Below are positions 23,689-28,245 of a stretch of DNA of 64,000 nucleotides, one piece after another. This stretch comes from Antechinus flavipes. Lineage: Eukaryota. Position 1 is the stretch's first letter; each line of letters opens with the position of its first letter. The DNA is taken from positions 578,026,001 through 578,090,000 of the forward strand of contig NC_067400.1 in the NCBI RefSeq assembly GCF_016432865.1. Direction: 5' to 3'. The position numbers and the translations under genes were made by a program. A model generated the notes under the pieces. That model saw only the letters and a list, made by a program, of their open reading frames with translations, searched no databases and was not told the DNA's origin.

Positions 23689-24310
23689 GATGAGGAGGGA
23701 AGGGAGTGAAGGGGACCTATTTGAAGATTATTGCATGAGTCCAATTGAGAGGGGCTGAGGTCCTGGACTTAGGCTACAGTTGTGTGAGTGTGGGAAAGAG
23801 GGGATATATTCAAGGGATGTAGTAAAGGTAGAAACAAGACTTGGTGACTAATTGGTATGTAGAGTGAAGAGAATAATAGATTTCCGACTGGAAGGATAGA
23901 GGTGTCCATGATATCAATGAGGAAATTTAAAATGGAGAAAGATGAGGAATTATTTTGGCCATGTTGAGTTTGAGCTGCTTATGAAACATCGAGTGTAAGC
24001 TACTCCAGAGGATGTTGGTGACTCGTTCATCAGAGACAAGAGCTATGTATAAATCTGGGAATAGGCTCCCTAAAGATAATAACCCATGAGAACTAAGGAG
24101 ATTACCAAGAGTATAGATAAAAGGATTCAGGACAGGGCCATGGGGGGTAGCCACAGTTAGAGGGCATGGTGAGAAGAACCAGTAAAGGAGACATGTGGAA
24201 GAACCAGGAGAGAGCAGCAGCATGAAAACCTAGAGGAGACAATGTCCGAAGGAGGCGACCGCCACTATCAAGAGCAACAGCAGAGGTTAAGATGGACACT
24301 GGATGGGGGA
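23689..24310 (-). mobile_element. L2 LINE remnant (RT region), continuing at about 22560-22940
   Basis: ORF-track peptide PHGPVLNP...LGNLLSSHG...QLKLNMAK resembles L2 RT (PQGSVLGP...LKLNMSK). Confidence 0.7.
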
Positions 24311-24767
24311 AAATTCCTGGGTATTGTGGGGCCAGCGGGTTCAGCTGAATGATGGCGAGGTCAGAAGCCAGGCTGCTGGGTTAGAAGAATAGGGGGAGAG
24401 GAAGGGAAGAGGAAGAGAAAGAGACCAAGCAGAGGGTCTACATCCCACACAGATGGGGTCAAGCCCTGACTCCACATCCTGAGCTTCCTGCCGCTGCACC
24501 GCCGCTGGCAGCCTCTTGGGAGCTTGGATGTCCCACTGCCCCCCAAGTAGGTCCAGAATAGCAGCCCCGGCAGCAGCAGGGGACCTCTCCAGCCCTGGCC
24601 TGGATGACGTGTGCCCTGCCGGGGGGGGAGGCCTCCTTCCGCCTTGGATCCAGGTGCCCGCCTCCCTGGGAGGAAGTGGGGTGGGCACAAAGGCCTGGTT
24701 CCAGCCTGATGCTGATGTCTCTTGACAGCTGCCGCCCAGGCTGGCCCAGCAAGGGGAGGGGACCTGA

Positions 24768-24823
24768 TTTAAAGCACCCGCTGCTGCCCCAGCTGCCTGG
24801 GAGTCGTGAGCGGAAAGCCGCAG
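24768..24823 (+). promoter_or_regulatory. Candidate ZNF593OS core promoter and short non-coding first exon
   Basis: TTTAAA TATA-like box at 24768-24773, then CAG|GTGAGC donor at 24823/24824; matching acceptor tttccccccag| at 25176, 13 nt before the ATG; no upstream ATG in the leader. Confidence 0.55.
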
Positions 24824-25189
24824 GTGAGCATCCTCTCCAGGCATCCACGCCCTTGGGTTGGGGGAGATGAAAGGAGCTCTCCTTGAATGGGGGTGATGGG
24901 TACAGAGGAGGGGGGTGGGAACTGGACGATACAGAGCTGAGCACCCAGTAACAAGGAGAAGGAAGCGGGGGAGATTCTGTGTATGCGCACCCGAGCTTGG
25001 GAGGCGAGGGGAAGAGTGAGGGGTGGGGATCTAGGAAGAGGTAGCCCTAAGCATTCCTGCCCCCTCCCCTTGACCCAATTTCTACTCTGTGACATTGGAA
25101 ATGCCAGCAGGGTTTTCATCCCCCTCCTGTCCTCTCGGGACGGCCACCCAGAAATCGGAGCTATCTTTCCCCCCAGACCTAGGCCAACC

Positions 25190-25748
25190 ATGCGCTTTGG
25201 ACGACTGACCCCCGGCTATTTTCGAATGCTAGAGGTAATTTCTCCCCCATAACTGCCAGGCTCCCTCCTTCTCCTCCAGCCCCAGCCCGCCACAGTAGAG
25301 CCAGCCAGGCACGTTGCAAGCCGCCTGAGCAGCTGGGCCCCGCATGCTTGCCCTGCAGCACTGATGCGAGAGAGCATCGGTGTGGAATGTCCCTGGGAGG
25401 GAGGCCATCCTCCTGCCCTTCTGAGGCCCCCAAAAGAAGGGGTGGGGTCACTGGCACCCCCCACTCAGCCCTACCCTTTTCCAAGGCACCCCCACCCCCA
25501 ACATCCCCAGTCCAGATCCTCAAGGCCAGAGAAAAACACTCCTGGGGCCTTGGTGGAAAAGGCCCCTCCCAACGCTGCTCCCTTTCTACCCCATTACTCA
25601 GATGCAAGTGGCTGGGGAGCTGGCGGCAGAACCCCGGAACAAGCTGGTGGGTGCTCTGGCCACACTGCTGGCTGTGTTCGGCCTGGGTCTCTCCTTCTAC
25701 AGTGTCCGGCAGCTGGCGGATCAAGGAAAGTCCCCAAAGACCCCATGA
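25190..25748 (+). CDS. ZNF593OS: ZNF593 opposite-strand transmembrane microprotein, 63 aa, join(25190..25234,25602..25748)
   Basis: [63 protein letters not shown]. Kozak-like ccaaccATG, GT-AG phase-0 intron, one hydrophobic helix. Matches the recalled human 63-aa ZNF593OS ([15 protein letters not shown]...) and its syntenic position. Confidence 0.9.
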
Positions 25749-25954
25749 CAGGACAGGCAGCCCCTGGAAGTCTGGGAGCCAGTATCCACCTCACCCCAAA
25801 TCCAGAGGAAGACCTCTTCCTGCCTTTTCTACCACTTTCTGTCCCCTTACCCATTGGACAGCACGCCCCAGCAAGCTGGGAGGCCAAGGGAGAAAGGATG
25901 GGGTATCGGGAGCACCCATGCCTACCTAGTCTGGAGAAGTGGGAGCCCTGATGG

Positions 25955-25960
25955 AATAAA
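25955..25960 (+). terminator. AATAAA poly(A) signal, probable ZNF593OS
   Basis: First AATAAA about 210 nt after the ZNF593OS stop codon. Confidence 0.6.
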
Positions 25961-26207
25961 TCTGGAAACCTACAAGGTGCAGAGAGAAGACGTGCCGTAA
26001 CTGGGGCTCTGTCTGGTGACGTGCGTCCATAGCAAAGGGATCGGGAGGGAAGGGCTCCCTTCACCCAAAGGTTCGGCATGTGGCAGGGTCCCCACAAGCA
26101 AGCATAGAGACTAGGGGTAGAAGAGCTCCTGGGGCAATGTGGATGGGCAAGCATCAAGCTCCAGTAGGGAAATCAGAAACACGATGGAGTCAGAGCAGCT
26201 CAGCTCC

Positions 26208-26213
26208 TTTATT
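26208..26213 (-). terminator. AATAAA poly(A) signal, probable ZNF593
   Basis: tttatt on + strand about 100 nt past the ZNF593 stop codon. Confidence 0.7.
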
Positions 26214-26315
26214 GGGAAAGAGCAAGAACTCTGCTCTGAGAATTGGGGGAGAGTTCAGTTCAGCCAGTCCAGTCTAGCATCGCCATGCAATGGTTTCCTC
26301 TGCCTGCGAGCAGCA

Positions 26316-26457
26316 TCAGCTAGCCACCTCCATAGCAGCTGTGTCAGTGGATACATCTGTGGGCACTGCCAGCAACTTGGGGGGCACATAAGAGCCCATG
26401 CCCGCTGCCCGCTCTGCTTCTTCCTGACTGTAGGGTTCCACTGTCAGTTGCTTCAGC
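26316..26457 (-). CDS. ZNF593: ZNF593 coding exon 3
   Basis: [24 protein letters not shown]...; ttcag| acceptor; TGA at 26316-26318. Confidence 0.95.
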
Positions 26458-28245
26458 CTGAAGGAGAAAAGGAGCCAGAGTTAAAGAAGGGCCAGCACTA
26501 GATTGGGAAGAAGGGGGAAAGGCAGAGATCAGGGAGGGGATCTAAGGGAAGAGATTGCTGAGAGAGAAAGAAGAATGCTGTGGGGGAGGGAAACATTTCT
26601 TAAAGAAGGGCTGGAAGGGAAGATAACATCAGTGGAGGAGCCACCCCAGCTCTCACCTTTTTTTGTGATCTTTGGATTTTAAATGATTCTTCAGGCTGGC
26701 TGTATCAATGAAGTATCTCCTGGAGGGAGGCAGAGGTGAGATGTGTCTATGAGGTCCTTTCCCTCCCTCTTCATCCTCCCCTCAGAGAAGTAGAGCTGGG
26801 AAATGAGGATTCGGACAAGTCACTGGCCTCAAAACTAACCTTTCACCTCCCAGCTTCCTCTCCTTCTTGACCTAGGACTCAGTGCCTCCATCCCCTGAGT
26901 CCCAAAGCTTCCATTCCCAATTCTCCAGCTCTATTTCCCAAAGCCTCCATCCTCTGGGTCCTCAATTACCATATGCACCCAACCTCACAAATCTTTTAGT
27001 CCCAGGTCCCCAATTTCCCATCCCTCAGCCTCTACTCCCTAATTCCCCACTTCCCATCCCCCCAACCTCTCCACCTAGGTCCCCACTTCCCATCCCCCCA
27101 ACCTCTCCACCTAGGTCCCCACTTCCCATCCCCCCAACCTCTCCACCTAGGTCCCCACTTCCCATCCCCCCAACCTCTCCACCTAGGTCCCCGCTTCCCA
27201 TCCCCCCAACCTCTCCACCTAGGTCCCCGCTTCCCATCCCCCCAACCTCTCCACCTAGGTCTCCACTTCCCATCCCCCCAACCTCTCCACCTAGGTCCCC
27301 ACTTCCCATCCCCCCAACCTCTCCACCTAGGTCCCCACTTCCCATCCCCCCAACCTCTCCACCTAGGTCCCCACTTCCCATCCCCCCAACCTCTCCACCT
27401 AGGTCCCCACTTCCCATCCCCCCAACCTCTCCACCTAGGTCCCCACTTCCCATCCCCCCAACCTCTCCACCTAGGTCCCTACTTCCTAATCTTTGGAGCC
27501 TCTACCTTCTAGTCCCTACTTTCCAACCCTCTATGAACTTCTTCCTCCAGGTCCCTACTTCCTAACCCCTCCCAGCCTCAACACCCTAGGTCCCCACTTC
27601 CCAGCCCTCCCCTAGGCTCTCCCTCTAAGTCCCACTTTCTAGTCTCACCAGGTTGTCCCCTAGATCCCCACTTCCGAACGTCCCCAACCTCTACCTCGTA
27701 GTTCCCCATTTTCCAACCTTCTATGAACTTCCACCTCCAGGTCGCTACTTCCTAAATCCGCCAGACTCTTTACCTAGGTCCCTACTTCCTAGTCCCCTCA
27801 GCCTCCAGCCCCCCAGCCTGTTCCCTAGATCCTTACTTCTTAGCTCGTAGTTCCCCATTTTCCAACCTTCTATGAACTTCCCCGTCCAAGTCCCTACTTC
27901 CTAATCCCCCCAGCCTCTGCACACTAGGTCCCCACTTTCCAGCCCCGCCCCTCCCAGCCGGCACCCCCCAGACGCCACTTTCCAGCCCCGCCCCCCAGTC
28001 TCCACTCGTTGGGTCCCCCGCCCCCGGCCCGCCCCTCCCGGAGCTCACGCGCAGGCCAAGCAGCGGTGGTTGCCTCCCCCGGGCAAGTCGGGGTCCTGCT
28101 CGGCGTCGGGCTGGGGCCGGCGGGCTACGCTGTCGGGCCGCAGGTCCCGGTGAATCTCGTCCAGGTCTGGCCGCCGCCGCTTGGCCTTCAGCTGGCGGGC
28201 CAGGGAGTGCGCGCGATGTGCGCCGGTGCGCCGGGAGCGGGCCAT
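26316..28245 (-). CDS. ZNF593: Zinc finger protein 593 (Bud20-type pre-60S factor), 133 aa, complement join(28049..28245,26657..26719,26316..26457)
   Basis: [32 protein letters not shown]...CLACA|[20 protein letters not shown]|[47 protein letters not shown]; C-x2-C-x12-H-x5-H finger; GT-AG introns. Confidence 0.96.
26657..26719 (-). CDS. ZNF593: ZNF593 coding exon 2
   Basis: [20 protein letters not shown]; cag|...|gtgaga; 63 nt. Confidence 0.95.
27044..27475. repeat. 36-bp VNTR, 12 near-perfect units, ZNF593 intron 1
   Basis: Unit TCCCCACTTCCCATCCCCCCAACCTCTCCACCTAGG; 432 bp = 12 x 36; only three units differ, each by 1 nt. Confidence 0.97.
27476..27990. repeat. Degenerate C-rich repeats related to the 36-bp VNTR
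   Basis: Recurrent ...ggtccc(t/c)acttcc..., and ttccaacc(c/t)tctatgaacttc three times (about 27520, 27711, 27860). Confidence 0.7.

What the first reader, a model, noticed from the sequence alone, without database searches (positions are those of the whole stretch)
25190..25748. Hidden 63-aa single-pass membrane microprotein (ZNF593OS orthologue) intact in a marsupial
Seen: 15 + 48 codons joined by a phase-0 GT-AG intron give [63 protein letters not shown], with a good Kozak context, a probable TATA-like promoter, a non-coding first exon and an AATAAA. It is too short per exon for the ORF track. It has the same length as the human protein as I recall it, with a near-identical N-terminal 15-mer. 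Inference: conservation across therians argues for a real protein rather than an antisense lncRNA. The Arg-rich, acid-poor N-terminus followed by one TM helix resembles mitochondrial inner-membrane microproteins; this localisation is a guess.
Basis: partly seen in the sequence, partly recalled or inferred. Interest (0 to 1): 0.7.

Follow-up and report, generated by a model that had tools for sequence, protein, structure and literature searches.

The report
Known ZNF593OS membrane microprotein gene
The two-exon, 63-codon reading frame is real and under selection, but it is the already annotated antechinus copy of ZNF593OS, a tiny one-helix membrane protein found from lamprey to mammals whose function nobody has studied.

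Summary
Codons 25190-25234 and 25602-25748 (+) are joined by a 367-nt phase-0 GT-AG intron.

Their translations match, piece by piece, RefSeq XP_051847339.1, [quoted passage not shown]. The gene is therefore not hidden. It is annotated in this genome and in ten other marsupials, all intact at 63 aa.

The family is much older than therians. Named or hypothetical members occur in platypus, placentals, frogs, alligator, birds, coelacanth, sturgeon, teleosts, shark and lamprey. A sister clade (zgc:193593) occurs in shark, teleosts and turtles.

Coding is well supported:
- dN/dS is 0.14 against a didelphid-type copy.
- P8, Y10, L14 and G42 are invariant.
- The intron position is conserved.
- Synteny is conserved: the gene is convergent with ZNF593.

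A didelphid-type 443-bp contig already carries the exon junction spliced. In this species I could not show the junction, because the reads tool offered only low-depth contigs of a relative.

No Pfam family, solved structure or paper explains the function. AlphaFold gives a short N-terminal helix plus one membrane helix. The mitochondrial guess is compatible with the sequence but untested.

Verdict: real, ordinary, already known. This scan had not noted ZNF593OS before.

The parts
24769..24823 (+). Candidate promoter-proximal TTTAAA (24769-24774) and candidate non-coding first exon ending at 24823 (donor GT 24824-24825)
   Evidence: The signals are present in the sequence. Their use is not shown. 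Contigs of a relative run straight through this donor, and the didelphid-type spliced contig L001 keeps sequence from inside this 'intron'.
25177..25234 (+). Coding exon A: 13 nt of leader after acceptor AG 25175-25176, then 15 codons (25190-25234)
   Evidence: It equals residues 1-15 of P0003. It holds the family's most conserved motif: R5 L6 T7 P8 G9 Y10 F11 R12 and L14.
25235..25601 (+). Phase-0 GT-AG intron, 367 nt
   Evidence: The same junction is already removed in L001. The same position is interrupted in read-through entries from placentals, birds and teleosts (P0017, P0019, P0064, P0067, P0094).
25602..25748 (+). Coding exon B: 48 codons plus TGA; linker, membrane helix and short basic tail
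   Evidence: AlphaFold places a helix at residues 29-56 with pLDDT about 90.
25749..25980 (+). 3' untranslated region with AATAAA at 25955-25960
   Evidence: Sequence. The 3' end itself was not mapped.
26208..28245 (-). Convergent neighbour ZNF593: poly(A) signal (TTTATT on +) at 26208-26213, last coding exon at least 26316-26441, first coding exon 28045-28245
   Evidence: The ORF translations start with the ZNF593-type N-terminus and end with its C-terminal block. Naming them ZNF593 rests on my recollection plus position; Pfam matched neither piece to any zinc-finger family. In opossum-type genomes a 133-aa zf-C2H2_jaz gene sits about 600 bp downstream on the opposite strand. Contig depth rises sharply from 26256 in RNA-type runs of a relative.

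Best explanation
This is the Antechinus flavipes orthologue of ZNF593OS, a protein-coding gene of two coding exons lying tail-to-tail with ZNF593. That much is shown.

The next points are shown by model and conservation. It encodes a 63-residue protein with three parts:
- a basic, acid-free and almost invariant N-terminal motif ([10 protein letters not shown]);
- a variable linker;
- one moderately hydrophobic membrane helix (about residues 30-50) followed by a 13-residue basic tail.

The rest is inferred. The protein is too short for co-translational targeting, so it would be inserted after translation like a tail-anchored protein. It would then act as a small accessory or regulatory subunit of a larger membrane protein or complex. 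Docking would use the conserved small-residue face of its helix (A35, A39, G42, S46, all within 40 degrees on the helical wheel) and the invariant N-terminal motif on the cytosolic or matrix side.

The membrane is not settled. My odds are mitochondrion 40%, ER or other endomembrane 35%, elsewhere 25%.
For: Identity: exon B finds ZNF593OS of Sarcophilus and Monodelphis. The cluster look-up gives an Antechinus flavipes RefSeq entry equal to both exon translations.

Orthology: the tree places the antechinus protein with bilby, next to placentals, with platypus outside (supports 98/94 and 97/97). Synteny with ZNF593 and CNKSR1 agrees.

Selection:
- dN/dS is 0.14 against L001, with 13 of 23 differences at third codon positions.
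- All eleven marsupial proteins are intact at 63 aa.
- 85 representatives score E<=1e-3 in an exhaustive profile search, and 371 score E<=0.01 in the word-indexed search.

Splicing: L001 has the junction removed. Bird-type 65-aa copies sit uninterrupted on about 1.1-kb Logan contigs in 57 blocks of the collection.

Architecture:
- AlphaFold with 62 sequences gives H9-18 and H29-56, mean pLDDT 72.7.
- P8, Y10, L14 and G42 are invariant; R2, R5, L6, T7, G9, R12, Q17, A35, S46 and Y48 are conserved at 90% or more.
Against: - No spliced read or contig from this species was obtained. The only runs that could be laid were contigs about 95% alike, from a relative, at depth 2-5. They run through both introns and show no joints.
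- There is no evidence for the protein itself (no proteomics or ribosome profiling).
- The mechanism is inference from conservation only. No partner is known. There is no Pfam family, no solved relative and no fold match.
- Charges flank the helix on both sides (N region +2, tail +2), so the topology is not settled.
Confidence: 0.85

Rival explanations
1. Mitochondrial inner-membrane microprotein. The acid-free, Arg-rich N-terminus would serve as an uncleaved import signal. The moderately hydrophobic helix would be laterally sorted into the inner membrane, where the protein would assist a respiratory or assembly complex.
For: - The first 14 residues have net charge +3 and no acidic residue, in this protein and on average across the family.
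- Helix hydropathy is modest: GRAVY 1.89 here, family mean 1.31.
- Three weak, sub-threshold hints point the same way: Coa3_cc at E 0.023 in a turtle paralogue, DUF1358 at E 0.015-0.17 in placentals, and a COX7a-containing Atlas cluster at score 0.80.
Against: - All three hints fall below curated cut-offs, and the two Pfam hits (Coa3_cc, DUF1358) lie mostly in the membrane helix, where composition alone produces such scores.
- Import presequences are normally poorly conserved, whereas this N-terminus is the most conserved part of the protein.
- No targeting predictor could be run, and no paper places the protein anywhere.
Confidence: 0.4
2. Tail-anchored protein of the ER or another endomembrane. 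It would act like the phospholamban or sarcolipin class of micropeptides, which bind and tune a pump, channel or transporter.
For: - The helix ends 13 residues from the C-terminus of a 63-residue protein, so insertion must follow translation.
- The layout of cytosolic helix, linker and membrane helix resembles phospholamban. This comparison rests on established knowledge and was not tested here.
- The conserved small-residue face suggests helix-helix packing.
Against: - There is no sequence relationship to any such family.
- A basic tail and modest hydrophobicity are more typical of mitochondrial than ER tail anchors (established knowledge).
Confidence: 0.35
3. Not a protein: an antisense or neighbouring long non-coding RNA with a chance reading frame, or a copy that has decayed in this species.
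For: No RNA or protein evidence was obtained from this species. Each exon is short.
Against: - Conservation runs from lamprey to mammals with invariant residues.
- dN/dS is 0.14 with a third-position bias.
- The frame, splice sites and stop are intact here and in ten other marsupials.
- Alternative long ORFs over the locus match nothing.
Confidence: 0.02

Closest known systems
ZNF593OS of placental mammals (RefSeq 'putative transmembrane protein ZNF593OS'; for example macaque, hippopotamus, bat and rodent entries)
   Same: Same 63-residue length and the same start. It has the same N-terminal motif, the same phase-0 intron position, one membrane helix, and the same position next to ZNF593. Identity is 57-63%, and the antechinus protein is sister in the tree.
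   Different: Marsupials have E15 where nearly all vertebrates have Q15. Marsupials and platypus keep the ancestral S-x-Y-S-x-R-Q stretch at the end of the helix. Placentals have S-C-Y-A-V-W-K there and sit on a long stem branch of 0.37.
zgc:193593 clade (teleosts; unnamed entries in bamboo shark and sea turtles)
   Same: Same size, the same T-P-G-Y core and one membrane helix with G42, S46 and Y48. It is recovered by the same profile.
   Different: It is a separate clade (100/98) with G-Y-I-R instead of G-Y-F-R and L-L-G instead of L-L-A in the helix. No mammalian member appeared among the listed hits, but its absence is not proven.
Single-pass mitochondrial inner-membrane microproteins (for example COA3, the COX7A type, BRAWNIN/UQCC6, mitoregulin)
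   Same: Similar size, a basic N-terminus, one moderately hydrophobic helix and a short tail. Only sub-threshold profile hits were found.
   Different: No significant sequence or fold relationship was found. Localisation was not tested. The N-terminus is far more conserved than an import signal needs to be.
Phospholamban / sarcolipin-type regulatory micropeptides
   Same: The layout is the same: a short amphipathic helix, a linker and a C-terminal membrane helix. A conserved helix face could suit binding to a larger membrane protein.
   Different: No homology was detected, no pump partner is known, and this protein has a 13-residue tail beyond the helix.

Membership tests
ZNF593OS | Significant sequence similarity to proteins named ZNF593OS | tested here: met
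   Exon B scores E 2.7e-21 and 3.6e-18. Both exon translations equal XP_051847339.1 of Antechinus flavipes.
ZNF593OS | About 63-65 residues with the N-terminal R-L-T-P-G-Y-F-R motif and one membrane helix | tested here: met
   Alignments A1, A4 and A5, the conservation table and the AlphaFold helices at 9-18 and 29-56.
ZNF593OS | Phase-0 intron between residues 15 and 16 (mammalian numbering) | tested here: met
   The window has GT-AG at 25235 and 25601. Read-through entries from placentals, birds and teleosts break at the same point. L001 has this intron removed.
ZNF593OS | Lies on the strand opposite to ZNF593, next to it | tested here: met
ZNF593-type exons lie on the minus strand at 26316-26441 and 28045-28245. 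The same arrangement is seen in opossum-type genomes.
ZNF593OS | Orthology by tree rather than membership of the sister clade | tested here: met
   The antechinus protein groups with bilby, placentals and platypus. The zgc:193593 clade is separated at 100/98.
ZNF593OS | Spliced mRNA made in this species | tested here: inconclusive
   Only low-depth contigs of a relative could be laid, and they show no joints. The junction is seen spliced only in the didelphid-type contig L001.
Mitochondrial inner-membrane microproteins | Experimental localisation to mitochondria | not testable with these tools
   No paper reports a localisation.
Mitochondrial inner-membrane microproteins | Homology to a known mitochondrial family | tested here: not met
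   Only sub-threshold hits were found: Coa3_cc at E 0.023 (14.8 bits against a cut-off of 27) and DUF1358 at E 0.015 (15.6 against 23.4). PDB sequence and fold searches were empty.
Mitochondrial inner-membrane microproteins | Basic, acid-free N-terminus and a moderately hydrophobic helix | tested here: met
   Net charge is +3 over the first 14 residues. Helix GRAVY is 1.89, with a family mean of 1.31. This is compatible with the family but not specific to it.
Tail-anchored membrane proteins | Single membrane helix within about 30 residues of the C-terminus | tested here: met
   The model helix spans 29-56, the hydrophobic core is about 31-50, and the tail is 13 residues.
Tail-anchored membrane proteins | No N-terminal signal sequence | not tested
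   No signal-peptide or targeting predictor was available.

The most novel reading that the evidence does not exclude
ZNF593OS and its sister zgc:193593 would form an unstudied pair of T-P-G-Y-motif membrane microproteins that arose no later than the common ancestor of jawed vertebrates, the family itself reaching lamprey. A language-model lead to a 79-aa arthropod cluster hints that the family may be older still. They would serve as accessory subunits of a mitochondrial inner-membrane complex. Placentals would have remodelled the end of the helix, while marsupials and platypus keep the ancestral form.
Probability: 0.3. Interest if true: 0.45.

Novelty: already known. Interest (0 to 1): 0.15.

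Why it matters
For genome annotation this adds nothing new. RefSeq and Ensembl already carry the gene in this and other marsupials. The useful by-product is at family level. This microprotein is conserved for roughly half a billion years, has an almost invariant N-terminal motif and has a gnathostome-wide sister gene. Yet the searchable literature holds only one incidental mention of its name. That makes it a reasonable candidate for a first functional study covering localisation, partners and knock-out. The antechinus copy adds only one more intact orthologue.

Tried and rejected
- **Pfam:** exon B, 20 family members and 19 single proteins gave no family above cut-off.
- **PDB by profile:** only a chance hit at E 5.8.
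- **Foldseek against PDB with the AlphaFold model:** no match. I did not run the wider structural searches, because two helices carry too little shape information.
- **ESM Atlas:** it returned the protein's own family. By structure it returned only unrelated bacterial helical hairpins.
- **RNA evidence:** the run search returned no RNA run of this species. I laid four runs. Three gave contigs about 95% alike, and the change at 25717 reproduces the Tasmanian-devil residue. These contigs cross introns and the poly(A) site at depth 2-5, so they behave like DNA or pre-mRNA. One run gave nothing.
- **Genomic DNA of opossum-type orthologues:** Codon analysis was therefore limited to one pair.
- **Literature:** searches for ZNF593OS, Zfp593os, ZNF593 opposite strand, zgc 193593, ZNF593 with microprotein, DUF1358 and AL391650.1 found only incidental list entries. 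The supplements of the whole-genome PhyloCSF paper do not name the locus.
- **Alternative long ORFs over the locus, on both strands:** no family.
- I did not build or search the joined two-exon product. Exon B was searched by reference. Exon A (15 aa) is below the tools' length limits and was only translated. Full-length work used the database protein P0003.

Full report
**What is in the sequence.**
- window:25190-25234:+ translates to 15 codons. window:25602-25748:+ translates to 48 codons and a TGA.
- The intervening 367 nt begin with GT (25235) and end with a pyrimidine-rich tract and AG (25600-25601). The join is in phase 0.
- The start codon has A at -3 and C at +4. AATAAA lies at 25955-25960.
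- The proposed non-coding first exon has three signals: TTTAAA at 24769-24774, donor GT at 24824 and acceptor AG at 25175-25176. All three are present as letters.
- There are no N stretches within 24000-27000.

**Identity.**
- I searched the model exon by exon. Exon B by reference found two 63-aa proteins named ZNF593 opposite strand: Sarcophilus at 98% identity (E 2.7e-21) and Monodelphis at 90% (E 3.6e-18).
- Their clusters also contain entries for Antechinus flavipes, Sminthopsis, koala, wombat, Gracilinanus, bilby and Dromiciops. Tammar wallaby appeared later.
- The Antechinus flavipes entry (P0003, XP_051847339.1/340.1) equals exon A over residues 1-15 and exon B over residues 16-63.
The gene is already annotated in this genome.
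- I did not build or search the joined product myself. All full-length work used P0003.

**Surroundings.**
- On the minus strand, 28045-28245 and 26316-26441 read as the first and last coding exons of ZNF593. I recognised the ZNF593 N- and C-terminal blocks from memory.
- Pfam did not confirm this identification: a scan of these two short exon pieces gave no zinc-finger match.
- A poly(A) signal for that strand lies at 26208-26213. The two genes are convergent and their signals are about 250 bp apart.
- In opossum-type assemblies, a 133-aa zf-C2H2_jaz gene lies about 600 bp downstream on the opposite strand of the 63-aa gene.
- Other long ORFs across the locus match no family.

**Is it a coding gene?**
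- A profile of eight marsupial proteins, scored against 1.84 billion representatives, found 85 proteins at E<=1e-3 and 44 at E<=1e-10.
- Name look-ups identify members in macaque, hippopotamus, shrew, alligator, finch and sparrow, coelacanth, eel, stickleback, smelt, bamboo shark (two copies) and brook lamprey.
- A broader profile found 371 proteins at E<=0.01. These include platypus, many frogs, sturgeon and many placentals, most of them named ZNF593OS.
- Across 62 non-redundant members, P8, Y10, L14 and G42 never change. R2, R5, L6, T7, G9, R12, Q17, A35, S46 and Y48 are conserved at 90% or more.
- Against a didelphid-type copy (L001), dN/dS is 0.14 (dN 0.056, dS 0.396). Thirteen of 23 differences fall at third codon positions.
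- The differences seen in contigs of a close relative over exon B are two third-position changes and one change at 25717. That last change reproduces the Tasmanian-devil residue. No indels fall in the coding exons.
- All eleven marsupial proteins are intact at 63 residues.

**Splicing.**
- The run search found no RNA run of this species.
- The laid contigs are about 95% alike, at depth 2-5. They run through both introns and the poly(A) site and show no joints. They say nothing either way.
- Indirect support is good. L001 is a 443-bp contig of assembly GCA_029782595.1 whose product equals the opossum protein. It carries exon A joined directly to exon B at exactly the predicted junction. It must descend from a spliced RNA, either as a retrocopy or as cDNA in the library.
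- L001 nevertheless keeps the pyrimidine tract and AG upstream of exon A, together with a block that aligns to window 24919-25025.
- Entries that read through the intron in placentals, birds and teleosts break at the same residue.
- A bird-type 65-aa copy sits uninterrupted on about 1.1-kb Logan contigs in 57 blocks of the collection.

**Phylogeny.**
- A maximum-likelihood tree of 43 members separates two clades at 100/98.
- One clade is ZNF593OS proper. It holds shark copy A, lamprey (long branch, placement unsure), coelacanth, frogs, archosaurs, mammals and ray-finned fishes with a teleost duplicate.
- The other is a sister clade holding shark copy B, sea turtle and teleost zgc:193593.
- Mammals are monophyletic (97/97). 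Platypus lies outside marsupials plus placentals (98/94).

**Structure and mechanism.**
- AlphaFold2 with the 62-sequence alignment gives mean pLDDT 72.7. It predicts a short helix at 9-18 and a long helix at 29-56 with pLDDT about 90.
- The conserved helix positions A35, A39, G42 and S46 lie within 40 degrees of one another on a helical wheel. This is the pattern expected of a helix-packing face.
- The first 14 residues carry +3 and no acid. The helix has Kyte-Doolittle GRAVY 1.89, against a family mean of 1.31. The 13-residue tail carries +2.
- From this I infer a post-translationally inserted, tail-anchor-like accessory subunit. It would bind a larger membrane partner through that face and the invariant N-terminal motif.
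- No family, solved structure or fold match supports anything more specific.
- The mitochondrial reading fits the charge and hydrophobicity. It is echoed by three sub-threshold hits: Coa3_cc, DUF1358 and a COX7a-containing Atlas cluster. None of these is significant.
- The extreme conservation of the N-terminus is not what a mere import signal would show.

**Literature.** Only one paper in the library prints the name ZNF593OS, and it does so in a list of transcripts. Nothing was found on function or localisation.

**Verdict.** The feature, however, is an annotated orthologue of a gene known by name across vertebrates. It is ordinary as a finding. The family's function remains open.

Noticed in passing
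L001:1-443: This 443-bp contig of assembly GCA_029782595.1 encodes the opossum-type protein with the coding intron already removed. It still keeps sequence upstream of the exon-A acceptor. It is either a retrocopy or cDNA carried into a genome assembly.
   Followed up: partly
window 25742-25601 equivalent; proteins P0010, P0012, P0152, P0173 versus P0003, P0136: All placental copies replace the ancestral S-x-Y-S-x-R-Q at the end of the membrane helix by S-C-Y-A-V-W-K. They also sit on a long stem branch (0.37). Marsupials and platypus keep the ancestral form.
   Followed up: partly
proteins P0081, P0065, P0181, P0187, P0096, P0100: A sister gene (zgc:193593 type, with G-Y-I-R in place of G-Y-F-R) is present in bamboo shark, sea turtles and teleosts. 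It forms its own clade at 100/98. No mammalian member appeared among the listed hits.
   Followed up: partly
protein P0003 (ESM Atlas search): By language-model features, a 79-aa cluster of 75 mostly arthropod proteins scores 0.90 with 201 of 256 shared features. This is a lead that the family may predate vertebrates. No sequences were returned, so it could not be tested.
   Followed up: no
window 26882-27565: A long minisatellite lies inside ZNF593, between its first and last coding exons. Its 36-bp units read as a 12-residue Pro/Ser-rich repeat on the + strand and a Gly-rich repeat on the - strand.
   Followed up: no
window 24919-25025: A block inside the proposed first intron is conserved with the 5' part of the didelphid-type contig L001. 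It may be an alternative leader or a promoter element.
   Followed up: partly
window 24983-25252: An ATG at 24983 is in frame with the start codon and no stop intervenes. A transcript that retained the first intron could therefore encode an N-terminally extended product. Longer 'isoform X1' models exist in other species.
   Followed up: no
window 26256-26300: In RNA-type runs of a close relative, contig depth jumps to 14-148 at the 3' end of ZNF593. Over ZNF593OS it stays at 2-5, which suggests far lower expression of the microprotein gene in those samples.
   Followed up: no
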